Below are positions 7,800-34,066 of a stretch of DNA of 63,691 bases, piece by piece. Location: positions 145,291,258-145,354,948 of the forward strand of contig NC_068983.1 of the NCBI RefSeq assembly GCF_001194135.2. Direction: 5' to 3'. Numbering within the stretch: position 1 is the first letter of the stretch; the number at the start of each line of letters is the position of its first letter. The translations under genes and the position numbers were made by a program. This stretch comes from Octopus bimaculoides (Eukaryota). Under the pieces are notes generated by a model that was not told the origin of the DNA, did not search any database, and saw only the letters and a list, made by a program, of their open reading frames with translations.

Positions 7800-7938
7800 T
7801 TAAGTAAAATCTCTGTTTCTCAGTATAATTGGTGCAACCAAGGTCCACACATATAAAGCCAGAGCAAGCCAACAGGAGATCATTTTCACCCACATTGATG
7901 CAAAGTTGGAATTTAATGTTTTCAAATCTGAGCTTGGT
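7800..7938 (-). CDS. SERINC: SERINC exon 12, terminal (RPSSDLKTLNSNFASMWVKMISCWLALALYVWTLVAPIILRNRDFT*)
   Basis: TTTGTAG acceptor, 139 nt ending in TAA. WVK..S.W....LY.WTLVAP....NRDF is the family C-terminus. Confidence 0.97.
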
Positions 7939-8134
7939 CTACAAATAGAAACAAAACAAACAGAGGAAAATTATAACAGCATCTATATTTTTAAGAACAT
8001 GAAAATGAAAACTGACAATGAAACACTTCTTTCCTTTTATTTGGTCTGGGATGCATATAGTTACTATATGTAATTGTATTATGTAACATAACAGAGCTAC
8101 AGAATACAACCACAAAAATTATATAATATGGATG

Positions 8135-8169
<35 letters not shown>

Positions 8170-8173
<4 letters not shown>

Positions 8174-9090: not shown

Positions 9091-9727
9091 AGTTATATTA
9101 TGCTATACCATATTCTTTTTACTGTTTCTAGAGTGGTTGTTAGTAAATGCATACAAATACATCAGTAAGAAGGTAAGTGTATGGTCTGCCAATAAAGCCA
9201 TTTGTAAGATGATAACAAGGCAGTACAATCAATAACAAATAAAACTTTAGTCTTCATACACACACAAATAAACACACAAACATATAATATATATATGACA
9301 TGTAAAAGGCATCCTTGCCAGTGACATGTAAATGACACCTGTACTGGTGACACATAAATGGCACCCATGTTAGAGTTGTTATTACCTTTTCACTTTTATT
9401 CCTCCCCTGATGTTGTACAGCAGGGAATGTTTTTAATGATTTGGATATTTACAAATATATTGGATTGAATGCTCTTCCTTTTGCTAAACACTCAGCCAAA
9501 ATACAGGTGGCCTTATGAAGTAAAGAGCATCTATCTAGATTACATAATAATAAGTAAAGAGCATCTATCTAGCTAACATAATAATAAGAAAGAAGAAGCA
9601 AAGTGGCTGCAGTAAGGTTTTGAACTGGCAACCAATGTAATCGGTTGTCAATCTGGAATGTTTAAACAGTGGTGGCAGATGTGTTTCTAATTAATTAATT
9701 AATGAAATTATTAAAAAGCATACTAAC

Positions 9728-9881
9728 CTAAACCAGTTGGTGAGAGTCATCATGACATAGAGAGAGGCTAGGCAGAACATGAAGTGAAAGAAAGAGTAGC
9801 TGTAAGCAACCTCTTCATCCTCGTTGTCCCAGACATTCTGTCCACTTTTTCCAGTTTCACCATCTTCAGATTTAGTGGAAC
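9728..9881 (-). CDS. SERINC: SERINC exon 11 ([51 protein letters not shown])
   Basis: CCTTTAG acceptor, GTTAGT donor, 154 nt. Hallmark DNE...[21 protein letters not shown] motif. Confidence 0.97.
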
Positions 9882-11460
9882 CTAAAGGAAACAAAAGATA
9901 AATTGTTAAAAACATGACAGAAAAGAAAAACAGCTGATAGCACCTGGTTATTGCCTTGGTACAAAATGAAACAAAAAAAAAGTCATTATCAATTTGCATT
10001 ACGTTGACATTAAAAAACAAATTATCCACTTCCTTATTAGATTCAGATTACAACTGAGACTGTTTACATTTTACAAATTGTTGCCATTTCAACCAAACAC
10101 TGCAACATTTCAATTTTTCGGACCACAAAATACCAATCTGCAACATAATTGCATTTTTAAGAGTTTTATTTTTTTTATTTTTGTAGCAGATACGTTTTAT
10201 TTTATTTTAAGTTTTGTAAATTCCATCTCCCACTAACAAAAAAAAAAGGTAATATTTAATAAACAAAAGTTTCAAATTTTACACAGTGTAATTTAATGTC
10301 CCATTGGTTGACTGGTGACAACAAATTCCTAATAAGGCTTATTCAGAAATACAATAGCTACAAACGTTATTCTTAGGTAAAAGAAAGAATTTAAATCTAT
10401 TCAAAGAATTAGGTTATTTCGCAAGCGATTTAGAAACTCCATTATCTTTTAAAATTTATTTCTTCAAAATTACAGAATTACAATGTTCATTCATAGTTGA
10501 TTTGCGAAATCAATACCTCTCTGTGATTAAACAAGTACGAAATAATAAAATTTCAAAATAGTAACACTGGGCTCAATGTTATTAATGGCAACTCAATAGT
10601 AACATTGAGTCCAAGGGAAATGGTTGTAGTGATAATTATAACTTTTTATTTGTATTTTTAAATCTAAAAACAAAAAATATAAAAAAAGAAACTAGTAAAA
10701 AGAAAACCTGGGAGCAGTGCAGTTTATAGAAAAGTTTAAACGTGTAGTAAGGGGTGTGTAAAAAGAATAATTATATATATATATAAAAGCAGCAATAATG
10801 CAGCTTTGTGAAATGGGGAATAAATTAAATGAAGTAACTAGAATCAAATCATGCAGATATTAAGTGCCAATTCAAATCAAAGTAGTTAATTAAAGCTTTG
10901 CATAATTAGATTAATAAACTAATTTTGCAAAATTATACATTTAAAAATTTATAATCTATTATTCACTTCACAAAAAGACATTTTTATCATGTATAATCTT
11001 ATTAGTGAAGTACAGACTACATACTAATCATGAACTGCTAGAGTTCTTTAGTTTCATAGAAATAACAGCAAATCTCTATCATAAAAGGAAGGCCATGTCG
11101 AATAATGTGTAAGATAAACTGTTAGAAAAGATTAATCAATTAGAATGCGCTTAATCATAGGTCTACTCAATTAGTGCTGGCCCTAAACAATAACTGATAT
11201 TTACTTCTACTATATGGGTAACTGTTTAATTTACTCTAATTACATATGTAAAAATCTTTACGAAGCATTACTTAATATCTTGATAATCATTATCATTTAA
11301 TATCTATGTTCTATATAATATCTATGAAAACATTGCAGACTGTAATTCAATATAATATGCTTTGTTTCCATTTATATAATGTGCATACTTATAAGAATAT
11401 ATTACTATTTTATAGCAGAGTAAAAGCTTAAGAGCTTGAGTAGGGATTATAAGTTTTTTT

Positions 11461-12027
11461 GGATCTATTTTAAAACGGGGGCCACATTTTTCATTAATGT
11501 TTTACGTAGTGTTTTTGGTACGGAAAGACTTTCAAACTTCGTATACTTATCTATTTTGTGTTATAGAACAGAAATATATTTTTGTATTCGAATTTATTTC
11601 ATGTAAAAAATTGTCTTATTTCGATAATTTCAACCAATCACTGACAAGTATTCAGTTGTTTACATTTACTCCTTTGGCTGATTAAGAGAGGTAAAGCGTA
11701 TTTAATCTCCAAACCTTCGTTTTATTGCTTTTTTCATTTTAAACTTGCTTTAACCCTAACCCTAGGGTTAAGGTTAGGGTTAGGGTTAATTGTTTCAGAA
11801 TCATTTGTTTATGTAGTCGGCACTTAATGTATATCGGCTGAATGGACGTCAGTGATTGGTTGAAATTACAGAAATACGACAACTTTAACATGGAATAACT
11901 TATGGATTTCTTTTTTTTTTAAGAAGACTAAGAGAAAAAGATGTTTTATATGACACATTCTACCAGTGTTCCAAGTTTCAAAGTGTTTCGTTAATGAAAA
12001 ATGTGGTCCCCGTTTTAAAAAGGATCC
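11461..12027. mobile_element. 567-bp non-autonomous DNA transposon with about 39-bp TIRs and 8-bp TSD
   Basis: Left GGATCTATTTTAAAACGGGGGCCACATTTTTCATTAA, right TTAATGAAAAATGTGGTCCCCGTTTTAAAAAGGATCC; flanks GTTTTTTT. A related TIR starts at 4788. Confidence 0.8.
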
Positions 12028-15000
12028 GTTTTTTTTTTTTTATTAGTTTCTACACTTAACCAACCACCCAACTTAACACCACTGTCTGGCTCTTTGTAAA
12101 CCTTAGCAAATTCATTGTTGCAAGGTGAGCATCAACTACATCATCTTCATCAGTCTGCGAGGCCCTACAAAGGATAAGGACTCTGTTGCACCTCACTTGA
12201 CTTATAAAAAATAATGTATAACATCCTATTTACAAAGTAATTCTAAGGATGAGTGTTTGCAGGCAATAAACCAAATTAACTAGGTTTTTTTTTTTTTATA
12301 AAAATGTATATATTTGTTTCTGTATAATAAAACAGAAAGTTTTGGTGTATTTCTTTGACAAGGTACAAAGTCTATATTTACAATGATTTAGATAACATTG
12401 ATTGCATTTAACCCTGTATATTACTGGTACTTATTTCCTTGTTTAAGAAGGGGTGGATGGCTACACAGTGATGTGCTCCAGCATGTCTGCCAATCACTTC
12501 TCAGATAAATCTAAAATGTTAAAATATATCTAAAGAGATCAGTATCAATGTTACCTATATAGAAATGATTATTCTCACATTGATATTGCTCATGTCAGCT
12601 GGAGTAATGTGAATGCCATTGGTAGAAACTAATAATACATATCCACAATACACAACAGAAATAACATAGAAAACTGTTAGCAGATTTATGATCAAAGATG
12701 TTCGGTTATGACCAACTTAACTTTTTCTCAAACAAAGTGTATTTAAGATTATATTATCCAATATGTACTTCCAATTTTTAAAACAGTAAGATGTGATTTG
12801 AGGAAAATTTCATTTATTTCTATGAGCTCATTTTGTAACAGTTTAAAAGTTCTAGTGAAGCCACTAATCTATAATATCAAAAACAATCAGAACTCTAATA
12901 TGTAAAAACTAAGGAAGTTTTTTGCCAATATCAAATTCTATAAAAATAAAAAAAATTTTCAACATAAAAGTGTAATATAATAATAAATAAAAAAAAGAAA
13001 CCAGAAAAAGTATTCATTGAAATAAAATACACTTTTTTTTTTCTCAAAATGACCCATTGCCTCAGATTGAGGCAAGAGAAATCTGAACTAGAATTTAAAA
13101 ATGAAAACATATCTTACTTTATTACATATAAATCAAGAATAATTGAATTTTGAAAACATTTAGAGCATATTGATATAAAACTATTTCAATATCAACAGAC
13201 AAGCACATCAGTTGTCAGCATTAATTGCTAATGATGTGGAGAACAACAGTGATCTTAAACAACATAGAGCATAATAGCTTGGCAAAATCATGTTGGCCAT
13301 TTAAAGAAACATTACATATATTTCTTCATCTTAAACTTTTACAAGCCAAATAAATGCAACAGCAAAAAAAGACTACATTTCTTCAATTATACAATAATAT
13401 TGTATATATATATATATTATCATACATTCAAAAGAGAAACATTTATTGTATGAAAAATAATTATGATCCTGGATCTCTAAGCTAAAAAATTCAGTCTCAC
13501 TGAATAATGTCTCATGCAAAAATTATGTACAAATATTAAATCAATTTTACTTTAAACTAATTAATAGGTATATTGCTACAAACACAAATTGAACAACTTA
13601 ATAAACATAAAATTTCCATCTTACAACCACCACCTTAACTTCTGCTTAGTGAAATAACAGTAAACAGGATTCAAAAACAATTGCAGTTTTACGTCTAAGA
13701 TTTCATCCCAAGTTATTCATAAACTATTATTATTGCCCCTCGGTTTCAACATCATATATTATTAAGTACAATTCAGCACATACAGGAAACAGTTTGGCAC
13801 ATTATTTATTCAGGATGTTATAAACAATTCTGAGATACATATTTTTAATAGTAAATGTTCTAAAAGCTAAGCCCTAATTTTCTAATTTTAAGAAAAACGT
13901 TTGTTTTTTTTTTTTTGTTTTTTTAATAAAACCTGGAATTACTGAATTTTCATATATAATAAATATCAAATATTAGTTTTTTTTTAAAAAAATTTTTTCA
14001 GTAAGTAATTTTAATGAAATGACCAAGCAGTGACTAAAATAACTGTACTGCCACCGCAATTCTGTTTTGTCTAAGTCTAATGCTAATTTTACTCAAAGGG
14101 AAACAACTCTTCACATAATAAACTCTTGGCATACGACAACGAAAAATGTTTTTTCTTCTCTAAGGTAACTAGCTTGCAGACGTTAGAAACTAGTCAAAAC
14201 ATTTGTTAATATGCAGGTGATATGTGAAAGCATTAGACAATAATTGGATATATGGGTTGGAGGTAGGGCACATGCATTTCAATGCTGCTGTTAGAATAAG
14301 CTCGTACATTTTGGGGTACTGATCACAATGATCTGAAGGGTCAGAAGGTCAAATGGGCTGAGTGATACAAGTGTAAGACTGAACGACAACAATAATAACA
14401 TCTAACATAAGTAAATGGCCACACATTTTAGGTAGGGTAGGGTAGAGTTAAATAAACTGATTCCCAGTACTTGAGTAGTACTTTATTGACTCCAGAAGTT
14501 AAAAAACAGATAAAGTCAAACTCAATAACATTTGAATTAGTGATGTAAATGGATGTAACTATCACAAACCATTTCCTTTGGCACTCTACCAAACCATCCT
14601 ACCAAGAATACATAAAGTTGTCAAACACAATTCTTACAGGGAGGGTCTTTTTTCACTATGTTCTATGTAATGACAAGCTCATTGTTTTCTAAATAATTTT
14701 CTGGCTTAACAACAAACCTACTAGTACCTAAAAAAGAACATACTTTTTAAAGTTCATGTCTGTCTCAACTATACAAGAAGCCTAAATGAAATAGAATGTC
14801 TTTAATCAGGAAGCCCAACAGGTTCAGTTTGCCAGAAGCTTCTCATTCTACGAACATTGCACACAGTCTATTTCTACAGCTACAGAAGTATTTATATTGA
14901 AGCTGTCTCTCTATTGCTCAAAATGTTACTACATAGCACCCACATTTCTTAAAAGCTTTAAAGATGTTTTAAGCTCTTGATTTAGAGAAAAAAAAATGGC

Positions 15001-15823
15001 CAGTTAGGAATGCTACAATTCCTCACAAATCTCAGAACCAAAATATAACTGATTAGGGCTACACATTATAATCAAGATCTTATCCTGGGCCCTTCAACAT
15101 CCTTGAAGCTGTACAGTAACACTTCAGACTTTATTTTATTTTGAGAACTAGCAGAATCCATCCATCTCCAAGTCTAAGCAAACAGTGAATTTCTTCTAGA
15201 AAACAGAACGATTGATGGACAGAAAGTGATAAGAGAAGAACCAACCACAATACAGGACTAGTACTCTGTCAGCCCTAAAAGGATAAAGGACAAAGTTGAC
15301 CTCAGAGCATAGAGAGTCGAAAGGATTACTGCAAAGTAATCTCCTCAATGCACTAATGATTCTGACAATTGGTTGCATTGTCACTAACAATAATTAATAG
15401 TAGAGAGAGAGAGAAAAAAAACAGTTAAAATAAAAGAAATTACGAAGGTATTTTACACAGCTCAATTTAGTTGCTAAAACTGATATTTCCCAGATCTGCC
15501 TACAGCAGAACCAAACTGGCAAGAAACTTAAACTTTAGTTCATTCAACTGTTGTCATACACTTTATCAGGGTCTTCATTAAATACTTTGTTATTTAGGTG
15601 AAACATCTAAAACTATTTTATTTTAATAAATATAATTTCTTGGCAAAATACAAATTTGTCTTGTGATCTATTGTAATTATTTATTCAAGATCTAAGTTTG
15701 AGAAAACCACCCACAACTTTATCTATTATTCCTTATCAAACCACAGTCATACACTTGACACCACTCAGTGGCCAATATGACCAACTGTATATCAGATGCT
15801 GTCATCAAGTACATGACCATTAC

Positions 15824-15850
15824 CTCCATAAAAAGAATCTCCAAGTTTTT
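15824..15850 (-). CDS. Candidate 27-nt alternative microexon (EKLGDSFYG) in SERINC intron 10
   Basis: TTTACAG acceptor preceded by about 100 nt of U-rich sequence, GAG|GTAATG donor, phase 1/1, open frame. Confidence 0.5.
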
Positions 15851-16147
15851 CTGTAAATATTAAGAACACCAGAATATGAAGCATATTAAGATGATATAGA
15901 TAGAAGATTAAAAGAAAGAAAAACAAAACAAAACAAACAGAACTAAAACAATAAATGAAATGAAAGGAGGAAAAACTGTGTTAGTGTCAATAATAAAACG
16001 AAAACAGAAAAAAAAAAAAATAAAGACAGCAGTTGATGAGTACAACATGATATCCATTTTGATATAATATCACAAATACAAGAGCAACAATCGAACTGTT
16101 GTAAGAACTGTGCAAGCAAAAAGCAATAAGAAGTGCAGCTGACATAC

Positions 16148-16177
16148 CAGTGTCATTTAGAAGTATGGCCTCTGTGG
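16148..16177 (-). CDS. Candidate 24/30-nt alternative microexon ((AT)EAILLNDT) in SERINC intron 10
   Basis: TTTCTCTTTCTTACCTGCTGCCCTTGTAG|CCACAG| tandem acceptors (exon starts 16177 or 16171), CTG|GTATGT donor. Both forms are in frame, phase 1/1. Confidence 0.6.
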
Positions 16178-16579
16178 CTACAAGGGCAGCAGGTAAGAAA
16201 GAGAAATCTCACAGTTAAACATCCAGACAATAAAGGACAGATTGTTGTGCATTGTGCCAATGCACATCAAACTCTCCAGGCATCACCAATCATATTAGAT
16301 CTAGCATTGTCCTGGGGACATTGGGGGCACACACACATATACATACATACATATATATACACATACATATGTATACATATCTATACACATACATTCATGT
16401 ATACATATCTATACACATACATTCATATGTACACAAATGTACATACATATACATGTGTGTACATATACACACATACTTATATACACACACATACATACAT
16501 AAATATACGTGTATAATAGATGTATATATACATATATATACACGTGTATAATATATATAATATATGTGTATAATACATA

Positions 16580-16633
<54 letters not shown>

Positions 16634-17499
16634 GCCACAGGTGAATCCTAGTATTACATATGTATATGATAGCATTGCTATCAGAACTAATCAAAGATGT
16701 AGCACTGCACAGATATAGCTCTTAGTTTGCTCCCTGTAATATTTTGAAATCATGTCAATATACTCAGTATATAACTCAGGACAATGCTAGAATTTGTTTT
16801 ACAATAATAATAATAATAATAATTATTAATAAAATAATAATAATAATGACCAATCTCTGACAAGCTTTCTGCAAAGTAATATAAATGATTAGTATCATGT
16901 CAGATATAATGTTAACAGTCATCAAACGCTTACCTGAAGATATGTGTAAATGTGTTATGCTTTAGAATCAGATCTTCATTTTTAGTTTCATTACTGACAT
17001 TTTCTACTGAATATTTTAATTAATTATAATTAGCAAGCTAATGAAATTCTAATTTAGTGGTAACTTCTACAGGTGTTTCTTACATGAGTGGCATATATAA
17101 TGTAGGCTAAAAGTCTGATAATGAATACATGCCCACTACACTGGGAGACATGCAACATCCAAATAGGGAAGTTATATGTGTTTGGTTTATTAAATATATT
17201 TCTACACCTTTACAAACAAGTTCAGTAGAGTTAAGATGTTGTGTGTAATTATATAACTAAATGTTATTAAGATACTAGAAATAAAGTAGAAATACATAAA
17301 CTGAAAGCTAGAATTGAGAAACTGAAGAATCAAGAGGTGATGATGAGGGAGGTCACATGAAAAAATGTAAAATGATGAGTCGGCAAAGCAACTGATTTTG
17401 AAAGTATATGAAATTTCTCAGACAAATGAAATGTATAAATACTATTTTGTGTGAGGTGTGTAGTGGAGGGCAAAAGAGATTCTTAACTTATGCTGCAAA

Positions 17500-19490
17500 A
17501 ATCTCTCAGAAAACCATACTGGTGACATGATGAAATGTATCCAGTCCATATGATAAAGTGGTTGATGCTAGGAGGGCTATTAAGCTTTAACAAAACCAAA
17601 TAAACATAACAGCAAAGATTGGCACTTTCCTCTGTTGGTGGTGCATTTGCCAGATGATGAAGAAGCATAACAAGAAGCAAAAGTAGTAAGAAAAATGAGT
17701 GTGTCGGAGACAACCCTAACAATGTCAGCCCCATCCACAACAATGACAAGAAGTAAAATATTGAGTAACCTGTCCAACTCATCTCAGAATGGATAAGTTA
17801 AAAATAAATGCAAACCGGTGATAATAATTATCTATAGACATGAAAAGTGAGCTTTGGGGAAATATACCAAAAAGGTTCATGGCATGAATTTAAATTATTT
17901 AGATAAGCGGGTAGTGATGTACTGAATGATATACAAACAATAAAAATTCTTAATGAATTGAGATATGCTTTGCAGCAGGAAAAACATACACCTAGTGGTA
18001 ATTGTTAGCAATTTCAAAAATATTACAAAACTAATTTCACAAAAAATTTCATTTATTATTCTTAGAAGGAGAAAGCTCAACTCTGTTAGTAAAGACTTCA
18101 ACCATATTAATCTTATCATCTCCAAGAGGTTGCAATGGTCATGAATACTTCACCTTACTCCTAACAAAGCCATATAAAATAAATTAAAGCAGTCTTGGGA
18201 GGCAGAGTCTTTTCTACTAATTGGAAAAAAAACAAGTGGAGATGTTACAGCATTAATATTGATAGGGACTAAACTCGTGGTCAATGCAGAAACTGGGGAT
18301 AGACAAGTGGTTGGTAAGAGTTGTACAGAGATGTTGTCAGTAAGGTGAGGGTTGGCAATGAAGTAGGGCTTCACCAAGGATGAGTCCTCATCCCCCTCTT
18401 ATTCATTATAGTCCTCCAGGCAATAACAAAGGAATTTAAGACAGGCTGCCTCTGGGAGCTCCTCTATGTGGATGACCTTGCTCTAATAGCTGAGTCACTG
18501 CCAGAACTAGAGACAAAGTCTAGGCTGTGGAAGCAAAGTCTAGAATCGAGGGGCCTTAGGGTTAACCTAGCAAAAACCAAAGTCTTAGTAAGTAGGAAGA
18601 CTGACAAATCACAAATCCCCTCAGGTAGATGACTCTGCTTGATCTGTAGAAAAGGCATGGGTAGACACTCCATACAATGTACCCAGTGTAAACTCTGCAC
18701 ACATAAAAGGTGCAGCAATATCAAAGGAAGGTTAACCAGGAAGATAGTTTTGTGAGTGGCAGATGCACAGGGGCAATAAACACTGAGAATGTACAGCAAA
18801 CAGATTCCATCAAATGCCAGGGGGAAAAACTAGAAGCAGTTAATAGCTTCCACTACCTAGGTGAAAGAGTCTGTAGTGGGGTGATTGCTCTGAGAGTGTA
18901 GTGGCCAGAATAAGAACAGTCTGGGCAAAGTTCAGAGAGCTCCTACCTCTACTGGCAACTAAGGGCCTCTCAACTAAGGTGGTGAAGCATGACCTTCGAA
19001 CATTGGGCCTCACAGAGGCAATGACAGAAGACTGAGACCTTTGGAGATATGCTGTGATTGAGAAGACCCAGCAAATAAAGTGAGATTGCAGCCATGGCTG
19101 ATACCAGTGTTGCCCATTTAAGTCCTGCCCATTTAAGAGTACCCTTGAGAAGATCTGTTGAGTCAAATAAAACCAAAATCGTAGCTGTGGCCAGTGCCCC
19201 CTAACCGACTCTCATGCCAGTTTTGTTAAGGTTTTTACAGTTAGTGCCCTTCCAAATACCAACCACATTACAGTGTGGACTAGATGCTTTTTATGTGGCA
19301 CCAGGACTGGCAGGGTCACCAAATAACTTGCAAGACAAACAAGACAAAGATCCTTTGAGAAGAGAGGGGGAATTGGAGGAGACGATCTTCCAGCTGATGA
19401 AAGGTTAGAGTGTGACAAAGAGACAAAAATGAAACAGGGGTCTCGCTGTAGAGGAGATACATGGTTACCTGGTCAAAGAGAGAGAGAGGA
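17500..19490 (+). mobile_element. Degenerate RTE LINE with RT core (HQG..L.PLLF, YVDD), PHD-like Cys/His insert and 3' UTR
   Basis: From about 18280 the frame reads KLGIDKWLVRVVQ...VGLHQG*VLIPLLFIIVLQAITKEFKTGCLWELLYVDDLALIAE...KTKVL (YVDD at 18465-18476), with stops, frameshifts and an internal deletion near 18970. The 5' boundary is approximate. Confidence 0.85.
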
Positions 19491-19499
19491 GACATCTCT

Positions 19500-20600
19500 A
19501 CATTGGAGGTTATCCATAAGATTTAGAAAAGTAAAATGAATTTTCTACTTACAAAAGCCCTTTCATGTTGCTTATCAGAGAATGATCATTAACTGATGCA
19601 GTAAAAATCCATATTGATAGAACCACTGATATAATTAATGAACAACAGTTTAATATGAAAGACAACAAGAAATGGATATTTGTACTACCTGAACATAAGT
19701 GAACAGATTTTTGAGATATTAATAAATGAAAGAGGTAGGATCAGTGCCCATGGATTTTTGTTGGCCCTCCCTGACTATTGAAATCAATGGTATTCACTTA
19801 CAACTTTTGTAGGTCAACATCTGCAGGAGAAAAGTGGACCAGGGGTGGAGGGCAGAGGTCCACAGTTTAGTGATATAATGCTTAAGCAAGTATTTAACAT
19901 AAGATCTTCAAGGCATTGAGGCATATTAGGGACAACAAGAGATGATGGATGCATCAGGTAGGGTTTTCATGGCTGTAGTATTAGTATAAGCTTAGATTAA
20001 CGAGAGAGGTTATTGTAGCCATAGTAGAAAATGCAGAGAGAAAAGATAGTGTATTTGTGAGAAAGCTATTGTAGAGCATTACTGATTTTGCCAACCTGCA
20101 AAATGGTGTTCTTTCAGATGCAATTTAGGATGGATATTTGAATATTTGGTAGCAGTTACAGACAAGATATATGCAAATATTCTTATGCAGGTTGTATCTA
20201 ACATTTACAGTACAACTGATCAGAGTTGAAAAAGAAATCTAGTCTTCAATATACAGAGTTCCATTACATTTTGTGAATTCATCACAAAAATTGACTGAGA
20301 TTGTGAGGTCTAGCAGTTATAAAAATTGAGGGATTTAGCTTTAGCTGTGTGTTGAAATATGAGGAAAATGTGACAGAAATTTGGTGCTGTTGATGGGAGT
20401 ATGTATGTCATGGCATCACTGATAAATGTTTTCAAGTGCTTTGCCCATGACAACTGTGCTGATTGACAAATGAAAGGTAGGTCTTCGACTTAACTGAGTG
20501 AGGTGCCAGAGTTGGTAGTTTAATAGAGTGAATAGCTGTTGAGACAAACACAGTGCAGCCAGAGGTCAAGTTTTAGATCCAGGCAAATAATTTAGAACTA
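19500..20600 (-). mobile_element. Possible very old CR1/L2-type LINE remnant
   Basis: Only faint RT-like peptide traces near 19700-19760; no intact frame. Confidence 0.3.
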
Positions 20601-22649
20601 AGACTATATGAAGGAAGTTTGATAAAGAAAAGAAATCTATCATGATAACAATTGAAACAGAAGTTTCCAAAGAAGGTTACTAAGATACCCAAAAACAAGT
20701 TCAATTCTCATATAACCAGAAAACTCCAGCAAATTAAAATTAATTGAAAGTAAGCGACCAATAACTCAAATTTGAAATGTTAATTTATAAAATTAGTAAA
20801 AATTTTAATAAATTATGTATTAAAACAAAAAAGTACATACAAAATTAAATCAAATCAAATCAAATACAGAAAATTAAATTATTGGTGCAGTAATGAGTGT
20901 TCAAACACAAAAGAAACAGAAAGATGTATAAGAAAGCATTATTCCTATAACTTCTAATTAGAAATGGAGATATATGCTGAATGATTTCATCATAAAAGCA
21001 GAAAAAATGCAACTAATTAGGCATGCAGTATTAACATAAATCAAAAATCTTGTATAAATTACTTTGAAAACAAAGACTAAATTTCAAATTTTCTAATTGA
21101 AATAAAACATTAACATTTGAAAAGATTTAAGTAACTTTAATGCTTTGTTTTATTCAAATGTTAGACAATCAAACACAAAATATCCAATTCTATTTTCCGA
21201 CACTAGCTAGTACCAACATCATCCACCACCACTCTCTCTCCCCCTCTCTTACTAGTGATTCTTCATTAGTCATTCTTCAACAACTACACTGAAATCTATG
21301 CTTTGCTAATGAGGTTCTAATAAGACTGAATAAAGAACAGTTGTATAAATACTTACTGTAATAATTAAAATAATATTACTTATTGACCAGCATAATTTTT
21401 TTTTTTCTTCATCAAATAATTATTTCTCATTAAATCTTTAATACCCACTACATTAAATATGTTAACACTATCTTAAAACATTCAGTGACTATCATGAATT
21501 TAGATTACTAAGATTCTGTGAAGATATTCAAGCACCATTTTTTCTTTTTATTTTGCTTATGTTTGTTTTCTGCTGTTCCTATCTTTTTCCTTCCGAAAAC
21601 CCATTACCTATTTAAACAAGAGAACTGTACACACGAAAATTTCAAAGACAATAATCCTATCAAATAAGTGCCTACACACAATAAATGCCTATATCCAATT
21701 TTCTATGATGGAAATTAAAAACAGAAAGGAATGAAAAAAAATTTAACAAAGAAAATTATCAATGCCAGGCCCGCCTAACTGGCTCCTGTGCTGGTGGCAT
21801 GTAAAAAGCACCCACTACATGCTCAGAGTGGCCAGCACTAGGAAGGGCATTCAGCTGTAGAAACATTGCCAGATCAGAATGGAGCCTGGTGCATCCGCAG
21901 GCTCTCCAGGCCTCAGTCAAACCGTCCAACCCTAGCCAGCATGGAAAACAGACGTATGATGACGATGATAATAAAAATTGTATTTCTTTTTGTTTCTAGT
22001 TGGAGAAAAAAATAACCAACTTTTGAAAAATATATCAATATTATTCTTTCAAAAGAAACCTCTCCAAATTTCACCTCAAAATTACTACAAATACTCTATA
22101 CACATTCTACCTCAAACAGGTATATACAATGACCTGTCTTTTAACCTACTCACAGCGAGCTATCTCTATATACACTAACCTGCATCTTTTTGCAGCACAG
22201 TACTGCAATCCCAGCAAAGAGTAATCCTGTCTTACTTAATTGTCCCACAATGAAGGGTACACCTCACTATTGTATGGTGCACAAGGCATTATATATTTGA
22301 CAAATGTTTCATGGAGCTTAACTCATCACTAGGTATGACAGCAACGAAATGTCACATAGCAGTACCTGGTTAATATCTCAGTTTAAATAACCAAAAATAC
22401 GAATGTGAGTGATGTATATTTCTTTTCCCATCTTACTTCCTCTGGTAGCATGCTCCACTGAGTAGTTATGCATAAGTGTTACACATTTTGATTTTTACTT
22501 TGAGCGGTACAGTGAATGTTGTCATTCGAAATAAAATTAAGGACTATGTTTCTTTCTTTCTTTCTGCAAAAGTCTACAGCAATTACTCACCTCCACCCTT
22601 GATTCAATATCATTAAATTAGAAATTATTCATTAATTTAAAAAACTTAC

Positions 22650-22670
22650 AGACAGAAATAGACCACAATG
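22650..22670 (-). CDS. Candidate 21-nt alternative microexon (ALWSISV) in SERINC intron 10
   Basis: CCCCTCTTTTCCTTAG acceptor, GTAAGT donor, symmetric phase 1/1, no stop within the exon; TACTAAC 73 nt upstream. No transcript evidence. Confidence 0.45.
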
Positions 22671-24833
22671 CTAAGGAAAAGAGGGGAACATGATACTGAA
22701 ACTTACATAGAAACATGTTATAAATGGGTGACCAAAATGCATGTTAGTACATGTATTTTGGTTACCCATTATGAATCATTGCATTTCTCACAGCAAGAGT
22801 AGAAGGGAGTGCCTGTAACTTGACACAGGACAAATATTGCACAGGACTTCATTCAAAGAGCCCAGTTTTTGGAAGTTTCTTTCACATCAGTGAAAGATAC
22901 ATCAATGCAATTCCACAGTTTTTGTCTATGAAAGTTCATTCATTAAAAGTATTCGTTTTTACCTAGTGTTACAGTAAAATATACTTGCTGTTCACAGAGC
23001 CACACTGTGGGATCAAATCCAGAGCCCCAGAGCTGGGAAGCAAGCTGTTGAACCATACAATCGTCATAAGTCCCCACTCACCCTTTTAATGGCTCATTCA
23101 GAGGAGGAAAGACAACACACCTAACACTTTCTCAATGTCTCAAAGACTGGTGAGAAAAAGATAAGAAGCCATCCTCCAGCTTGGCCTGAATCCGAACAAT
23201 AGAGTAATTCTCTGCTGAAGGTGGTGATGTTAAACTAAGTGATGGATTAAATATCAGAATTTAATTACATCAATACTCTGCACAATCTAACCTCTCAGCA
23301 TGATTCTATTCCGTAGATTTTTTTTACAGTTTGTTCATCATCCATCACATTCAATGAGAACTTCTATCAGTATCAAGTGAATCTAAATAATGTTTTGAAT
23401 GCAGAGACTACTGCAAGCATGGAACATTCTTCAGTAGTGTAAATCAAGACGACTGGCACCACACAAGAATGTTAGTAACAGATTTCTGTTACCTTTGTTC
23501 TGCTGCTGCTAAATCTTTGTCAAGAAACGACAGTACAATATCAAGAATTTTATTCCTAACTATCAAGATTGACATCAAAAACTTACAACAAGATCTTCAA
23601 GAAGTCCGAAAAACATCTACTCAAATAGCGTCTCACCTTATGTCCGTACAAGCAGAGTTGTCTCCCTTGCAATCATTTCCGCCAATAACAGTAAAAGAGA
23701 ACGACTAACTATTGTCACGAACCAAATGGAGAAAATATATACTTTCCCTATCAGATGGAAGTTATTACTATCAAATTCCGTTTGAGAAATAATCTTATGT
23801 TTTATCCAACTTTTCAAGTCATTAATTAGATCGAATCTGGAAATAAATAGGCATATAGATCTGCTAATGCAATTGATTACACTGGTCAACAAAATTAAAT
23901 GTACTATACTCATTATGAATGCAAATCAACCTTTTTAGACTAATTTTTCATGCTGATTTCATATTTCACTCCATTTGTATGCAGCACGTATCAGTTTTCC
24001 AGTAGATACATGCAAATATTTACATATTTGTATATATGAAATCATTAACGTAATAAATAAGGACAAATAATTTTTAGAAAAGTAAACGAGTTTATTGAGT
24101 TGAAAATCATCTCTATCATTCTACAAAGAGTGAATACACAAAAAAAGTAATTAATGGAACAATATAATCTAAATAATGACAGAAAGTGGATGAGATGCTT
24201 CACTACTGCTTAGAGTTCACAAAATGTTGCCAAGAGAAAGAAGTTTCCTTTTCTTCACAGCAAAATAATTTATTTTACTTAACGATCTCTACATAATTTA
24301 TTATTGGCCAATACTGAAAAATCATTAGTTTCTCTGGATTCTATAGTTTCACTAGTTACACAGAGTTAGGATAAAATCTCAGAAATAGTCACACAGTTTT
24401 AATAAGACCCCAATACTGTATTAATAAGACATCCCCCACTTGATACTAAGTATATACAGTTGAAATGACATCCCACTACAAACAACATAGCTGAAGATAT
24501 GATAGATAAGAAAGAAGAACTAGTTACTATTTAAGTAATAGCTACATCTGGTTGTAATAAAAAAAAAAAACTACTGAGTTGAGCTCAAAAACCCAGCTTG
24601 AATCCTTGCTCAAAACCATTACATATCACTTAGGATTTATGTCTACAAGTCTAATCAAACTTTAAAGCTTAAATAAGTATAAACTCTGCAAAGGTGCCTG
24701 GAGAAAAAGGTTTTTGTGAAACTTCAAAATACTGCTGTAATTACAGAAGATTGTCATACATCTAACTAATACTTGGAATTTTAGTAATTAATTTTTATGA
24801 AATATTTATGCCAAATAAATGCATAAATCTTAC

Positions 24834-24907
24834 CTGTATCCAACTGCAGAATAGTTCTCTCTGACATGGTAATCTTACCCATTTGACTGTTACTTGAAGT
24901 ACGGATA
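24834..24907 (-). CDS. SERINC: SERINC exon 10 (SIRTSSNSQMGKITMSERTILQLDT)
   Basis: CTTTCAG acceptor, CAG|GTAAGA donor, 74 nt. SIRTS.NSQ motif begins the large cytoplasmic loop. Confidence 0.94.
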
Positions 24908-25621
24908 CTGAAAGACAAATTAAGATTACATTTTACCATCATAATAATCAATATCTGTAACTATTAATTCAATTTAAACCTAATATCAACTAAATAATCT
25001 CACAAAAATAAAGAAGCTTATTCCTCAATATTGCCATTAAAACTAATTACCTTTCCATCACCCTATTAAAACCAATTCATTTCCCATCACCCTATTTGCT
25101 TTTATTGTTCTTTTTATATTACATTATTTTGTTGTTATTTTACATCCATTTATCCATGTTAGCTTTTTCAAATTTAGATATTTGCATTGTACTACAAAGT
25201 AGTCATCATCATCATCATCATCATGAAGCAGACATACTTCTTTGACCAGAGATATCACAAAATGTGTACAATTAAAACAACTCTTGCTCATCACTAGTCA
25301 AGCATCTTACATTATCCCATTGGAACAGGAAATATTTCCAAGAACATTATATCACACATATTTCATTGTAAAGAACACAACTCATGATTTTAATGAAGAC
25401 AGTATTTTAGGAAGCTAAACTTTAAATCTTCCTCAAATCTCTAAGACATCACTAAGGATTTATATTCAGCTATCACTGCATTCAGTTGGGACAGGTATCT
25501 GTTTATTCCAAGTGAAGCTGACAGGGTTATAAAAAAGTAAGGTATGTGAAACATATAGATGAAAATTTGCAGACAAAAAGAAACATGAAATAATGAGAGG
25601 AGAAAATTAAATAAATGTCAC

Positions 25622-25745
25622 CTTGAATAGAGAACTGCAAAGAGCCACAGAAGCAAAGCAATAATACTCTGCCAATCGAATATACCTAGTTTGGCAAAGT
25701 CTCCTTGTTCATTGGGACATTTCTCTTGTGGATTGCAGGCACAAT
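25622..25745 (-). CDS. SERINC: SERINC exon 9 (DCACNPQEKCPNEQGDFAKLGIFDWQSIIALLLWLFAVLYS)
   Basis: TTTTATAG acceptor, GTGACA donor, 124 nt. C.P loop followed by a D..SI..L TM segment. Confidence 0.93.
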
Positions 25746-27558
25746 CTATAAAAGAAACAAATAAATATCCACGTCAATTTCAGCAACTATAAGTGATAAG
25801 ATATCTAAGGGAGTTAAATCATTTTCGACGATCAAGTATATATTTCAAGGAATTTTTTCCCTTCCAAATGTATAAAATTACATTACAAATACGGAATGAA
25901 AACACGGGTTAAATAGTGCAAGTAGAAAAAAAAAATTACATATAAGTTAAATGTTTATATCTACAAAGAAGTTTTATTAAATGGTTATCTACTAGGTGTC
26001 ATTATTTTATATCCTAAGGCTGGTAGAATTGTTAGAGCATTGGGAAAAAAAGCGCTGTGTAGTATTTCTTTCAATTCATAACCTTCTGAGTTCAAATTCC
26101 ATCAAAGTTGACTTTACCTTTCAGGGTCAATAAGATAAATGCCTGTTGAACAATGGAGTCGATATAATTTACTATTCTCCCTCACCTAAAATTGTTGGCC
26201 TTGCGCCAAAATTTGAAACCATTATTCAAATATTCAGATTCTACAAGAATGACTTCAATAGCTGAACCTTTCAGGCAAGCAGACAAAGGACTGAGATATT
26301 TGGTACCCCACAACGGAAGTGTTAAGGCCAATCCTTCAAGTGGTGTAAAGCACTCGTGGTGGTGCCATGTAAAAGCGCCCATGCAGTGCCACGTAAACGA
26401 CCCAGCACTCTCTGTAAAATGGTTGGCATTAGGAAGGGCATCCAGCTGTAGAAACCATGCCAAATCAGATTGGAGTTTGGTGCAGCTCCACAGCTTTGGT
26501 CACACCATCCAACCCATGCCAGCATGGACAACAGATGCTAAATGATGATGGGATAGTCACACTGCATCCCTGCCTGTCTCTCAGCTAAGAGACAATTGTA
26601 TATGAAACATCAATGTTACTTTGTACATATTTCAATGATATATAACAGATTTGCCCAAACAAAGCTAACTGTGACTACAAAACAACTTCTAACTTGAATA
26701 AATTTGGAAAAAAAATTGGCCACAATTGAGTGAATCAACCTAGTATCTAAAAGTAGTCATTTCATAAATTCTAAAGCAATGAAAGGGAAAGTCAATATAT
26801 TTAAAATTTAATTTGGAATGTTAAGGGCTAAAAAACCAAATATTCTACCATTTCTGCCACATTAACACCTTAGTAACAAGAAAGATAGTGAGAGCCTTTA
26901 CATGGTTGCTCAGCCTGCTAGAAATAACAGCAAGTTTCTTTCAAATTGTACACTAGTACAACCAGCTATCACTCAAAAGTAAATTTAGCTTGGTATCATG
27001 TACCATAATTTTGCTAATTGCTTTAATTTTAATAACCATGAGCCATATTTTAAAAAACAGACATGTTAGACACTCCAAATACACTATATCTGGAGGGAAA
27101 TAGATGGTCATAGCCACAATGTCTTTGGTTATATCTTACTTAATCCCTTCGCTCCCTGTGGAACATAGATCATTGACGATTTTTCTCCACTGTTCTCAAC
27201 ATTGTGCTGTTCAGTTTTGAATTGTCATCCATGCTTCTGTAACTGCTTTTTTTCTAGATAGGGGTGTTGGCCCTACACAAACTCATTTTTATTTCTGGGA
27301 AAAGGTGGCTCATATTAATCTGGCATCTAACCATTGACTTGTCCAGCAGGGAAGTCTGCAACATGAATTGGACCTGGTTCTTCAGGTTAAATCTAAAATA
27401 AACTAGACCTATATAAACAAACCACTAAAAGGTAACAACAATAATCAAAATTAATAAATCTGTCTATATTAGAGAAGTAAGACGACAAATTTGTGGGGAG
27501 CCAAAGCAGTTGGTTGAATGAGTAAATTATGAACAAGAAAACTGAAAGGTAAGTTTAC

Positions 27559-27645
27559 CTGGATTGTTGGTCATGGCCGACCAAGTCAAATACATGGAGT
27601 AAAACGTGATGATTGATGCCTGAAGGAGACCAGATCTTGGTTGGA
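27559..27645 (-). CDS. SERINC: SERINC exon 8 ([29 protein letters not shown])
   Basis: TTTTCAG acceptor, GTAAAC donor, 87 nt. Hallmark QPRSGLLQ and MYLTWSAM motifs. Confidence 0.97.
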
Positions 27646-27896
27646 CTGAAAATAATTGAGAAAGTATTAGCAATGCAGAATTTTAATGAAAGGTCTTTAT
27701 CAAGCAAGACATATTATAACCAAATAGAAGCAAAGTGTAACATTTATAATCCTGTCTCTACTCATCACACACGAACTCTCTACCTGGACTCTACCTTTTT
27801 TCATTCTGGACTATTTATTCTGGACTTTTTTTTATTCTGAACTTTGCACTCTCCGGCTGCACCTCTCCTGCCCACGGATTACGCTGTACCTATCTA

Positions 27897-27938
<42 letters not shown>

Positions 27939-28914
27939 CACACACATACACAGATTGCAACAAATGGCAAGATACTCCACTGGAATAGAGCCATCCAACC
28001 CATACAGTATGGAAAATTCAGATACAAAATGAAGATTATACTGCATGCACTAGTAGCAAGTACCCAGTATTACCTAGATTCATAAATTACATAATCAAGA
28101 AATACTTTAATCTCTCACCACCTGAAATCTAATCCCAATAAGATCTGTACAGTGTGTGAAGAAATATTTCACAAGAAACAATGTTGAAAAAGCAAATTGA
28201 TCAAAAAAAAAAAAAACAGTTAAAATCAAGGAATTGAGATGATGAACAGGTGAAAATATTAAAAACATGAAATAATATCACAGTCATCATCATCATCACT
28301 AATATTTTGCATTTGTTTCATCTTATTGTATGGGTTGGGCAGTATATCAAAAATAAATACAAGCAGTTTCAAATGTAGAGCTGCATTTAAAATACTTAGA
28401 TCAAGACAAACTATTTTAAATGTTTGGTGTCAAGATACATTCAAAAACAAAATTTCAGCTATGGATGTTCAACTGGTGGAAACAAGACACAGATGGATGT
28501 TATTTCATTTCTAAGATTAAATAAGTCTTTTTAATTCCATCAGAATTTTTCTTTTATACTTCTGTGTATCTATGAGAAACTATTTGAGTCATCAATTGAT
28601 CCAAAAGCAGTCTGATTGATAATAGAATAGCACTGAATCTGACAAGATCCAACTTGAATAAAATTACAAAACTTCATATCTTCTATGTTCAGATTTAACT
28701 CAAATACTCTCTGGTTCATTTTATGCCTGTTATTCTGTGCTAGCATGGGTTATATGAATGTTATAGAAGCACTATTTTATAGGCAGATGCCCTTCCTGAT
28801 GCTAATGTTTGTTTTTCCAGCATGGGATCTCTTATTCCATACAGCTTCAAAAGCACAAAGCAGGCTGGCAATCCATTACATAAGGAGAAATGCCAAGAGA
28901 ACACCACACATACT

Positions 28915-29303
28915 CTCTTTTACTCTTTTACTTGTTTCAGTCATTTGACTGTGGCCATGCTGGAGCACTGCCTTTAGTCGAGCTAATCGACCCCAGGACT
29001 TATTCTTTGTAAGCCTAGTACTTATTCTATCGGTCTCTCTTTGCCGAACCACTAAGTGACGGGGACGTAAACACACCAGCATCAGTTGTCAAGCAATGCT
29101 GGGGGGGGGGGACACAAACACACACACACATATATATATATACGACGGGCTTCTTTCAGTTTCCGTCTACCAAATCCACTCACAAGGCTTTGGTCAGCCC
29201 GAGGCTATAGTAGAAGACACTTTCCAAAGGTGCCACGCAGTGGGACTGAACCCGGAACCATGTGGTCTTCAGCAAGCTACTTACCACACAGCCACTCCTG
29301 CAC
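28915..29303 (-). mobile_element. tRNA-derived SINE (abundant octopus-type family), near full length
   Basis: Minus-strand head GCAGGAGTGGCTGTGTGGTAAG...CGGGTTCAGTCC with A/B boxes, internal (TA/TG)n, 3' end GACTGAAACAAGTAAAAGA. Exact family name not assigned. Confidence 0.85.

Positions 29304-32036: not shown

Positions 32037-32073
<37 letters not shown>

Positions 32074-34035: not shown

Positions 34036-34066
<31 letters not shown>

What the first reader, a model, noticed from the sequence alone, without database searches (positions are those of the whole stretch)
15824..22670. Cluster of in-frame microexons that could combinatorially remodel the SERINC cytoplasmic loop
Seen: the 15-kb phase-1 intron between exon 10 (...QLDT) and exon 11 (GSTK...) contains three short AG-exon-GT units of 21, 24/30 and 27 nt. 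Each has good splice sites, a length divisible by 3, phase 1/1 and no internal stop. Established: 3-27 nt frame-preserving microexons are a bilaterian neural programme driven by SRRM3/4-type eMIC proteins, and this loop of vertebrate SERINC3/5 carries trafficking and Nef-sensitivity determinants. Inference: a tissue-specific microexon cassette tuning sorting or interactions of a lipid scramblase-family protein, likely missed by annotation. My scan was manual, so chance hits are possible.
Basis: partly seen in the sequence, partly recalled or inferred. Interest (0 to 1): 0.8.

Follow-up and report, generated by a model that had tools for sequence, protein, structure and literature searches.

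The report
Two real, annotated SERINC loop microexons
Two of the three tiny candidate exons (30 and 27 bases) in a long intron of an octopus SERINC gene are real alternative exons that lengthen a cytoplasmic loop, are conserved across octopus, argonaut and cuttlefish, and are already in the public gene models; the third (21 bases) looks like a chance match.

Summary
The window is Octopus bimaculoides chromosome CM046603.1. The gene is SERINC1-like, on the minus strand. Intron 10 (24833..9882, 14,952 nt, phase 1) contains the three units exactly as described.

Sequence statistics alone could not tell them from chance. 349 AG-3n-GT stop-free units occur in the intron, against 341±18 in shuffles.

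Exact look-ups settled the question:
- The +30-nt isoform is RefSeq XP_014777282.1 (X1).
- The +27-nt isoform is XP_014777283.1 (X2).
- The skipped form is XP_014777284.1 (X3).
- O. sinensis and O. vulgaris have the same three forms, and one O. vulgaris model includes both exons.
- An RNA-seq contig (SRR32601320) carries exon10–30nt–exon11.

Conservation agrees. The 30-nt exon sits in the most conserved block of the intron. It is intact in Argonauta and cuttlefish with a conserved UGCUGC upstream, and it is spliced into Sepia esculenta transcripts. The 27-nt exon is intact in Argonauta (in-frame +3 nt) and at the collinear site in cuttlefish.

The 21-nt unit and the 24-nt acceptor variant have no model, no transcript and no conservation above background. 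The 21-nt unit also creates stop codons when joined to the 27- or 24-nt units.

"Missed by annotation" is wrong. Neural, eMIC-driven regulation and a sorting function remain untested.

The parts
24834..24907 (-). SERINC exon 10 (74 nt; ...SIRTSSNSQMGKITMSERTILQLDT plus G of a split codon); upstream constitutive exon
   Evidence: Gene model. The assembled protein matches Pfam Serinc over positions 1-434 of 434, E=3e-164.
9882..24833 (-). Intron 10, 14,952 nt, phase 1; splits the Gly codon in the TM8-TM9 cytoplasmic loop (ICL4)
   Evidence: The same loop was deleted in the SERINC3 structure construct 7RUG.
16148..16177 (-). 30-nt alternative microexon (inserts ATEAILLNDT); real, annotated (isoform X1), conserved across coleoid cephalopods
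   Evidence: Exact match to XP_014777282.1. Logan cDNA L065 contains exon10+30nt+exon11. 30/30 identical in O. sinensis, 29/30 in Argonauta, 28/30 in cuttlefish. Spliced into Sepia esculenta transcripts L069-L073.
16186..16191 (-). UGCUGC motif 11-17 nt upstream of the 30-nt exon's acceptor, after a pyrimidine tract (GAUUUCUCUUUCUUAC)
   Evidence: Conserved in O. sinensis, Argonauta (expanded there to UGUUGCUGCUGCUGCC) and cuttlefish. The cis-code is described in PMC8797185.
16012..16247 (-). Longest perfectly conserved block of the whole intron between O. bimaculoides and O. sinensis (236 nt), enclosing the 30-nt exon
   Evidence: A 101-column window centred on the exon is 100% identical, the 98.8th percentile of the intron. 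The region aligns to Argonauta (16408..16011, E=3e-69) and cuttlefish.
15824..15850 (-). 27-nt alternative microexon (inserts EKLGDSFYG); real, annotated (isoform X2), 297 nt downstream of the 30-nt exon
   Evidence: Exact match to XP_014777283.1. O. sinensis and O. vulgaris X2 carry EKLGNSFYG. Argonauta keeps AG and GT with an in-frame +3 nt. Cuttlefish has a collinear 27-nt unit with the same atatttacag| acceptor, ERLEGSFWG.
16148..16171 (-). 24-nt variant using the internal CACAG| acceptor; no evidence of use
   Evidence: The exact isoform is not in the protein collection. The AG lies inside conserved coding sequence, so its conservation says nothing about use.
22650..22670 (-). 21-nt unit (ALWSISV, changes Gly to Cys); most likely a chance pseudo-exon
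   Evidence: No model or transcript. The unit is identical in O. sinensis, but its flanks are at background conservation (93%, 66th percentile; rank 110/349). No counterpart in Argonauta or cuttlefish. It makes TAA or TAG when joined to the 27- or 24-nt units.
9728..9881 (-). SERINC exon 11 ([12 protein letters not shown]...NWFR); downstream constitutive exon carrying the acidic cluster NEDEE and TM9
18363..18966 (+). Decayed LINE reverse-transcriptase fragment, antisense to the gene (intron filler)
   Evidence: RVT_1 E=2.6e-7. Copies elsewhere in the window.
21760..21977 (.). SINE-like repeat copy (intron filler)
   Evidence: Eight or more copies in the window at 72-87% identity.

Best explanation
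The window carries the Octopus bimaculoides SERINC1-like gene: minus strand, 12 coding exons, ATG at 55614, stop at 7800. Intron 10 interrupts the codon for the Gly that follows ...ERTILQLDT in the cytoplasmic loop between TM8 and TM9 (ICL4).

Two cassette microexons lie 297 nt apart in the middle of this 15-kb intron. One is 30 nt (16177..16148) and the other 27 nt (15850..15824). Both are phase 1/1, so each can be skipped or included without changing the frame. This gives loops of +0 (isoform X3), +10 residues ATEAILLNDT (X1), +9 residues EKLGDSFYG (X2), or both (modelled in O. vulgaris). These points are shown.

The 30-nt exon is at least as old as the octopod-decapod split, and probably the 27-nt exon too.

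The following is inferred. The 30-nt exon, with its weak context, conserved UGCUGC next to the acceptor and ultra-conserved flanks, is recognised with help from an SRRM3/4-type (eMIC) activator, so its inclusion is tissue-regulated, probably enriched in neurons. Its product adds a second copy of the acidic-hydrophobic patch that already ends exon 10 (ERTILQLDT then ATEAILLNDT). In ungapped register this patch sits within one residue of SERINC5 L350/I352, upstream of the acidic cluster. Splicing would therefore tune adaptor or partner binding of ICL4 and hence trafficking.

The 21-nt unit and the 24-nt acceptor variant are chance decoys of the kind any AT-rich 15-kb intron contains by the hundred.
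For: Identity of the isoforms:
- My spliced models equal XP_014777284.1, XP_014777283.1 and XP_014777282.1. The same three forms exist in O. sinensis and O. vulgaris, plus a 30+27 model, CAI9719501.1.
- The window distances match GCA_001194135.2 CM046603.1.

Transcripts:
- L065 (SRR32601320) contains exon10+30nt+exon11.
- Five Sepia esculenta RNA-seq assemblies and other decapod runs carry ATEAILLNDN at the same junction. Many more assemblies carry the skipped form.

Conservation:
- The longest perfect block of the intron encloses the 30-nt exon.
- The exon and its flanks align to Argonauta and cuttlefish, where almost nothing else in the intron does.
- The 27-nt exon keeps its splice sites in Argonauta, with an in-frame 3-nt insertion. 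Cuttlefish has a collinear 27-nt open unit.

[quoted passage not shown] The 30-nt exon has a conserved UGCUGC at -11 to -17.

Loop identity:
- The junction lies in the loop deleted in SERINC3 construct 7RUG.
- SERINC5 ICL4 residues L350, I352 and S360 govern Nef and AP-2 responsiveness (PMC8385645; PMC10085909).

Against the 21-nt unit.
Against: - Inclusion of the 27-nt exon rests on gene models from three Octopus species and on conservation. I recovered no transcript contig that contains it.
- Double inclusion rests on one O. vulgaris model with an aberrant C-terminus.
- Tissue specificity could not be examined. The runs that yielded inclusion isoforms are whole larvae or of unknown tissue.
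- The AG exclusion zone of the 30-nt exon is only 28 nt. The single UGC upstream of the 27-nt exon is lost in O. sinensis.
- The inserted peptides match neither the [DE]XXXL[LI] nor the DXXLL consensus exactly.
- The register with SERINC5 L350/I352 is an ungapped positional comparison, not a tested alignment.
- The 21-nt unit is intact in O. sinensis, so a genus-specific exon is not excluded.
Confidence: 0.85

Rival explanations
1. All three units are chance pseudo-exons, and the intron contains only repeats and filler.
For: Sequence statistics alone cannot tell them from chance. 349 bare units are observed against 341±18 in shuffles. The density of units with equally good splice sites matches other non-coding sequence. 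Frame-preserving lengths are not in excess. This was my working conclusion until.
Against: The +30 and +27 isoforms match RefSeq models exactly. A cDNA contig contains the 30-nt exon. Both exons are conserved with their flanks in Argonauta and cuttlefish. Cuttlefish transcripts include the 30-nt exon.
Confidence: 0.02
2. The 21-nt unit is also a real microexon, but young (Octopus-genus specific) and rarely included, so gene models miss it.
For: It has a strong pyrimidine tract and a GTAAGT donor. The unit and both splice sites are identical in O. sinensis.
Against: - 205 of 349 bare candidates are equally intact in O. sinensis, so this carries little weight.
- Its flank conservation is at background, rank 110/349.
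- The upstream TACTAAC has a deletion in O. sinensis.
- There is no counterpart in Argonauta or cuttlefish.
- No model or transcript contains it.
- It encodes a hydrophobic ALWSISV in an otherwise polar, acidic loop and replaces the conserved Gly with Cys.
- It gives a stop codon when followed by the 27-nt exon.
Confidence: 0.1
3. The 30- and 27-nt exons are real and functional, but they are not part of the neural SRRM3/4 (eMIC) programme. Inclusion is broad, or controlled by other factors such as Rbfox or PTB-type proteins, or by developmental stage.
For: - No tissue data were available.
- Inclusion isoforms were assembled from whole-larva cuttlefish libraries.
- A conserved UGCAUG lies in a conserved intronic island about 1.5 kb downstream (14276..14271).
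- The 27-nt exon lacks a conserved UGC.
Against: The conserved UGCUGC directly upstream of the 30-nt acceptor, the pyrimidine tract and the ultra-conserved flanks fit the eMIC exon code. The skipped form dominates across assemblies, as expected for tissue-restricted inclusion.
Confidence: 0.4

Closest known systems
RefSeq isoforms X1/X2/X3 of O. bimaculoides serine incorporator 1 (XP_014777282.1, XP_014777283.1, XP_014777284.1), with their O. sinensis and O. vulgaris counterparts
   Same: Identical. The +30-nt, +27-nt and skipped products I derived from the window equal these records residue for residue.
   Different: The records are automated models. Nothing in the literature I searched describes the exons, their age or their regulation. 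The 21-nt and 24-nt forms are not among them.
Bilaterian neural microexon programme driven by the SRRM3/4 eMIC domain (PMC8797185)
   Same: Frame-preserving exons of 27-30 nt that insert a few residues into a surface or disordered loop. UGC motifs lie next to the 3' splice site after a pyrimidine tract. Flanking intron sequence is very strongly conserved.
   Different: Neural enrichment and SRRM dependence were not tested. 30 nt is just above the strict 3-27 nt definition. The AG exclusion zone of the 30-nt exon is short, at 28 nt.
Oyster (Crassostrea virginica) SERINC isoforms
   Same: The homologous phase-1 intron after ...LQSDS holds two tandem microexons. One is 21 nt (ttttag|GTGATGCTCCACTAGTGGATG|gtatga, GDAPLVD). 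The other is 15 nt (aacag|CTGACAGCTACCGAG|gtgagt, ADSYR). Annotated isoforms contain one or neither. The order of motifs also resembles cephalopods: an acidic-A-x-L-[LIV] motif first, then DS[FY]xG.
   Different: Lengths and sequences differ. Homology of the exons themselves, as opposed to recurrent origin, is not demonstrated.
Human SERINC5 splice isoforms and ICL4 determinants
   Same: The same loop (ICL4) carries L350/I352, S360 and the acidic cluster that control Nef and AP-2 responsiveness.
   Different: The known human SERINC5 isoforms differ at the C-terminus, not in ICL4. No vertebrate ICL4 microexon turned up in my searches.
Mutually exclusive exon-10 versions in an unidentified invertebrate SERINC (metatranscriptome contigs L012 and L014)
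   Same: Alternative splicing remodels the same loop. The variable block corresponds exactly to octopus exon 10 and has the same length class, 2 mod 3.
   Different: The mechanism is exon substitution (104 nt versus 80 nt), not microexon insertion. No second copy of exon 10 exists in the octopus introns.

Membership tests
SERINC / TMS1 family (Pfam PF03348) | Full-length match to the family profile | tested here: met
   Exons 2-12 product matches Serinc over positions 1-434 of 434, E=3.2e-164. Closest structures are human SERINC3 7RU6 and fly TMS1d 6SP2.
Alternative cassette microexon | Length of about 30 nt or less, divisible by 3, canonical AG/GT, no stop in the host frame | tested here: met
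   All three units qualify. This criterion alone is met 349 times in the intron, so it does not discriminate.
Alternative cassette microexon | Both inclusion and skipping seen in transcripts: 30-nt exon | tested here: met
   Inclusion: Logan cDNA L065 and cuttlefish contigs L069-L073. Skipping: cuttlefish and squid transcript-derived proteins P0099 and P0218 and RefSeq X3.
Alternative cassette microexon | Both inclusion and skipping seen in transcripts: 27-nt exon | tested here: inconclusive
   Inclusion appears only in gene models (XP_014777283.1, XP_029634469.1, CAI9719504.1, CAI9719501.1). I recovered no transcript contig containing it.
Alternative cassette microexon | Exon and flanks conserved above intronic background: 30-nt and 27-nt exons | tested here: met
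   Against O. sinensis, the 30-nt exon ranks 1 of 349 and the 27-nt exon 24 of 349 for flank identity. Both are intact in Argonauta. The 30-nt exon is intact in cuttlefish, and the 27-nt exon is present there at the collinear site.
Alternative cassette microexon | Exon and flanks conserved above intronic background: 21-nt unit | tested here: not met
   Flank identity is 93%, the 66th percentile, rank 110 of 349. Nothing aligns in Argonauta or cuttlefish.
eMIC (SRRM3/4)-dependent neural microexon | UGC motif(s) close upstream of the 3' splice site, with a pyrimidine-rich tract | tested here: met
   30-nt exon: UGCUGC at -11 to -17, conserved in four species. 27-nt exon: a single UGC at -33 that is not conserved in O. 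sinensis.
eMIC (SRRM3/4)-dependent neural microexon | Long AG exclusion zone upstream of the exon | tested here: inconclusive
   28 nt for the 30-nt exon and 90 nt for the 27-nt exon. Constitutive exons of this gene range from 26 to 100 nt.
eMIC (SRRM3/4)-dependent neural microexon | Neural-enriched inclusion | not testable with these tools
   No read-level RNA-seq was available. The run accessions could not be tied to a tissue, or were whole larvae.
eMIC (SRRM3/4)-dependent neural microexon | Loss of inclusion when the eMIC domain protein is removed | not testable with these tools
   This needs an experiment.

The most novel reading that the evidence does not exclude
The phase-1 intron inside the SERINC ICL4 loop may be an ancient splicing switch, mollusc-wide and possibly older. 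Two tandem microexons would insert, respectively, an acidic-hydrophobic patch and a DS[FY]xG patch next to the determinants that control adaptor binding in vertebrate SERINC5.
- First patch: cephalopod EAILLND, oyster DAPLVD or DAQLID.
- Second patch: octopus GDSFYG, oyster ADSYRG.

On this reading the cephalopod and oyster exons are homologous, and inclusion is eMIC-driven in neurons. That would give a splice-controlled trafficking code for a lipid-scrambling membrane protein, conserved for more than 500 million years.
Probability: 0.2. Interest if true: 0.6.

Novelty: already known. Interest (0 to 1): 0.35.

Why it matters
SERINC proteins are studied mainly as HIV restriction factors. Their cellular role and the role of ICL4 outside viral antagonism are poorly understood. 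A pair of microexons kept in this loop since before octopuses and cuttlefish diverged, together with a parallel pair in oysters, suggests that animals themselves tune this loop by splicing. The isoforms X1, X2 and X3 are natural reagents for asking what the loop does in trafficking or partner binding.

For the scan itself the case is a caution in both directions. Splice-site and frame statistics could neither validate nor reject real microexons in a long AT-rich intron. The 'unannotated' claim failed on a simple look-up.

Tried and rejected
1. Chance-only reading. PWM scoring, dinucleotide shuffles, an antisense control and other-intron controls all said 'no more than chance'. I held this view until the exact isoform look-up showed it was wrong for two units. 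The statistics stand, but they have no power for single microexons.

2. Homology search with a 75-aa exon10+11 query. It returned only proteins of 132 aa or less and none from cephalopods, which wrongly suggested that the collection held no cephalopod data. A full-length query found them.

3. Exon-11 orthologues in unnamed ENA contigs L002 and L003. The intron there is over 10 kb and shows no DNA similarity, so they were uninformative.

4. A second, mutually exclusive copy of exon 10 in octopus introns 9 and 10. None was found. The weak resemblance of the 30-nt peptide to the end of exon 10 (5/12 identities, E=54) may be meaningful as a motif repeat, but it is not statistically supported.

5. 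Longer cassette exons in the intron. The only hit was a 105-nt pseudo-exon derived from a transposable element.

6. RNA genes in the window. There were no Rfam or tRNA hits.

7. Exact look-ups of N-terminally truncated isoforms and of a full-length O. sinensis 30+27 form. None is in the collection.

8. Tissue of origin of the runs carrying inclusion isoforms. They were whole-larva Sepia esculenta studies, or no paper was found.

9. Supplementary tables of the 2026 bioRxiv study of tissue-specific splicing that includes O. bimaculoides. They are not held.
Full report
**What is there**

The finding lies on the minus strand.
- Exon 10 ends ...GAT ACA G|gtaaga at 24834.
- Exon 11 begins tttag|GT TCC ACT AAA at 9881.
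- The intron is therefore 24833..9882, 14,952 nt, phase 1.

I located the other exons with a SERINC sequence recalled from memory, used only as a probe. Exons 2-12 assemble into one open frame of 442 codons. That product matches Pfam Serinc over the whole profile (E=3e-164) and human SERINC3 and fly TMS1d structures. Exon 1 (MGCIIGSIGTS) is at 55614..55582. The gene therefore spans 55614..7800.

- 21 nt at 22670..22650;
- 30 nt at 16177..16148, or 24 nt at 16171..16148;
- 27 nt at 15850..15824.

All are phase 1/1 and open.

**Is it more than chance, from the sequence alone?**

No.
- The bare criteria (AG, 3n ≤ 30 nt, GT, no stop in phase 1) are met 349 times in the intron. Dinucleotide shuffles give 341±18.
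Other non-coding sequence on the same strand gives 0.27-0.47 per kb.
- Among all well-scored AG..GT pairs, frame-preserving ones are not enriched.
- Only the 24/30-nt unit stood out a little. About one shuffle in six gave a unit as good.

The intron also holds a decayed LINE reverse-transcriptase fragment, a SINE copy and microsatellites. No Rfam or tRNA hits were found. At this stage I took all three units for decoys.

**What overturned that**

I built the spliced proteins for the canonical form, each unit, the open combinations and an internal-donor form. I then looked them up by exact sequence. Three of them exist:
- canonical = XP_014777284.1, serine incorporator 1 isoform X3, Octopus bimaculoides;
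- +27 nt = XP_014777283.1, isoform X2;
- +30 nt = XP_014777282.1, isoform X1, which is also present in a Logan assembly.

The +24, +21 and all other combinations are absent.

The same cluster holds O. sinensis and O. vulgaris X1, X2 and X3, with ATEAILLNDT and EKLGNSFYG at the same junction. It also holds an O. vulgaris model with both exons in tandem and another with the 30-nt exon followed by a retained intron.

The Logan contig L065 (SRR32601320, 1711 nt) contains exon10+30nt+exon11 exactly. Distances between landmarks in the window equal those in GCA_001194135.2 CM046603.1. The window is therefore O. bimaculoides.

**Conservation**

*O. sinensis.* The orthologous intron (L066) aligns over 94% of its length at about 92% identity.
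- The longest perfectly identical run in the whole intron is 236 nt, at 16247..16012. It encloses the 30-nt exon. Taking about 0.93 identity per site, I estimate (no tool was run for this) a chance expectation of roughly 4e-5 for such a run anywhere in the intron.
- A 101-column window is 100% identical at the 30-nt exon (98.8th percentile), 97% at the 27-nt exon (88th) and 93% at the 21-nt unit (66th, which is background).
- Genus-level intactness is uninformative. 205 of the 349 bare candidates are still intact in O. sinensis.

*Argonauta hians.* In L067 only a few islands of the intron still align.
- Two of them carry the 30-nt exon (29/30, the one change synonymous) and the 27-nt exon.
- The 27-nt exon keeps TTACAG| and |GTAAT and has gained GGA in frame.

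*Cuttlefish (Acanthosepion pharaonis).* In L068:
- With the default word-11 search, the only intronic island that aligned was the 30-nt exon with its flanks (28/30). A more permissive search added mainly non-collinear matches from the low-complexity stretch between the two exons.
- About 410 nt downstream sits atatttacag|AACGACTTGAAGGCAGTTTTTGGGGAG|gtaacc. This is 27 nt, the same phase, and encodes ERLEGSFWG.

*Decapod transcripts.* Transcript-derived proteins show both forms...ILQADT-ATEAILLNDN-GS... and ...ILQADTGS.... Five Sepia esculenta RNA-seq assemblies contain the spliced 30-nt exon. Other runs do too.

*The 21-nt unit.* It has no counterpart in Argonauta or cuttlefish.

**Verdict on each unit**

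- 30 nt: real, alternatively spliced, coleoid-wide.
- 27 nt: real by gene models in three species and by constrained conservation. I did not recover a transcript containing it.
- 24-nt acceptor variant: no evidence of use.
- 21 nt: best read as a decoy.
  - It codes for a hydrophobic ALWSISV in a polar, acidic loop.
  - It replaces the conserved Gly with Cys.
  - It gives TAA or TAG when followed by the 27- or 24-nt units.

**How it probably works**

Shown: the exons insert 10 and/or 9 residues between ...ERTILQLDT and GSTKSEDGE.... This is in the TM8-TM9 loop, the loop removed in SERINC3 construct 7RUG.

Established elsewhere: in SERINC5 this loop (ICL4) carries L350/I352, S360 and the acidic cluster that control Nef and AP-2 responsiveness.

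Inferred:
- The 30-nt exon has a pyrimidine tract followed by UGCUGC at -11 to -17. This is conserved in octopus, argonaut (where it is expanded) and cuttlefish. It fits the cis-code reported for eMIC-dependent microexons in flies and mammals. The skipped form also dominates across assemblies. Tissue-restricted, probably neural, inclusion is therefore plausible but untested.
- The inserted ATEAILLNDT repeats the motif that ends exon 10 (ERTILQLDT). In ungapped register with the SERINC5 peptides quoted, that motif falls within one residue of L350/I352. It resembles acidic di-leucine-type signals but matches neither consensus.
- I therefore propose, without a test, that splicing changes adaptor or partner binding of the loop.

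**Beyond cephalopods**

Oyster isoforms differ at the same junction: SDS-G-ASDSG, SDS-GDAPLVD-G..., SDS-ADSYR-G.... In the C. virginica locus both inserts are tandem phase-1 microexons of 21 and 15 nt with canonical sites in the homologous intron. Many other mollusc records are 'isoform X2/X3' with different residues here.

In an unidentified invertebrate, two metatranscriptome contigs are 99% identical except for a swapped exon-10 equivalent.

Alternative splicing of this loop is therefore common. Whether the exons are homologous or recurrent is open.

**Novelty**

A full-text search for microexon plus SERINC found nothing relevant. A 2026 preprint that analyses O. bimaculoides tissue-specific exons does not mention SERINC in its text, and its tables are not held.

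The deep conservation and the oyster parallel seem undescribed. They are still an ordinary instance of a known kind.

Noticed in passing
L012 nt 1140-1243 versus L014 nt 1125-1204 (JGI metatranscriptome contigs Ga0210333_1166567 and Ga0210370_1040878): Two SERINC mRNAs from an unidentified invertebrate are 99.1-99.6% identical on both sides of one swapped block. The block equals octopus exon 10 (104 nt IRQSSMSTMEKLTLKSKDIEKVWLDTDTPNKNEDDH versus 80 nt IRSSSHSSLGKLTMQGSENTNLSSKPDD; both lengths are 2 mod 3). They look like mutually exclusive duplicated exons that remodel the same loop.
   Followed up: partly
L079 7670-7690 and 8467-8481 (Crassostrea virginica CM130315.1): The oyster SERINC gene has two tandem phase-1 microexons in the homologous intron. 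One is 21 nt (GDAPLVD) and the other 15 nt (ADSYR). They account for its annotated isoforms. The motif order resembles the cephalopod pair.
   Followed up: partly
window 24878/24879, minus strand, inside exon 10: An internal consensus donor, CAAATGG|GTAAGATTAC, lies 45 nt upstream of the real donor, ACAG|GTAAGATTTA. Using it would delete 15 residues (GKITMSERTILQLDT) in frame. The exact product is not in the protein collection.
   Followed up: partly
window 16933/16934, minus strand (island 17012..16626): A juxtaposed acceptor and donor, TCTTCAG|GTAAGC, is conserved between Octopus and Argonauta. It is followed about 60 nt later by a conserved ACTAAT...TTGCAG| acceptor. It looks like a recursive-splicing (ratchet) site or an unannotated exon edge in this 15-kb intron.
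   Followed up: no
window 14406..14186, minus strand: An intronic island is conserved to Argonauta (72%, E=1e-26). It is also the second-longest perfect run against O. sinensis (14384..14248). It contains a conserved UGCAUG (14276..14271, an Rbfox-type motif) and a 6-nt AG|ATCATT|GT unit (14332..14327) whose AG and GT are kept in Argonauta.
   Followed up: no
window 11003..10539, minus strand: A further intronic island aligns with Argonauta at the collinear position (E=1e-20). Its function is unknown.
   Followed up: no
window 18363..18966 (+), 21760..21977, and copies at about 5100-6200, 8200-9100, 26400, 31200-31900, 34100, 44000-45700, 52400-53300: The window is peppered with copies of one SINE-like element and fragments of a LINE with an RVT_1 domain followed by a Cys/His-rich stretch (weak, sub-threshold PHD/C1 matches). 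There are also several runs of N and CA/TA microsatellites.
   Followed up: partly
P0096 and P0097 (O. vulgaris CAI9719505.1 and CAI9719501.1): One O. vulgaris model reads from the 30-nt exon straight into the 297-nt intron (retained intron, early stop). Another includes both microexons but diverges inside exon 12 into an unrelated 110-residue tail. These may be annotation artefacts or minor transcripts.
   Followed up: no
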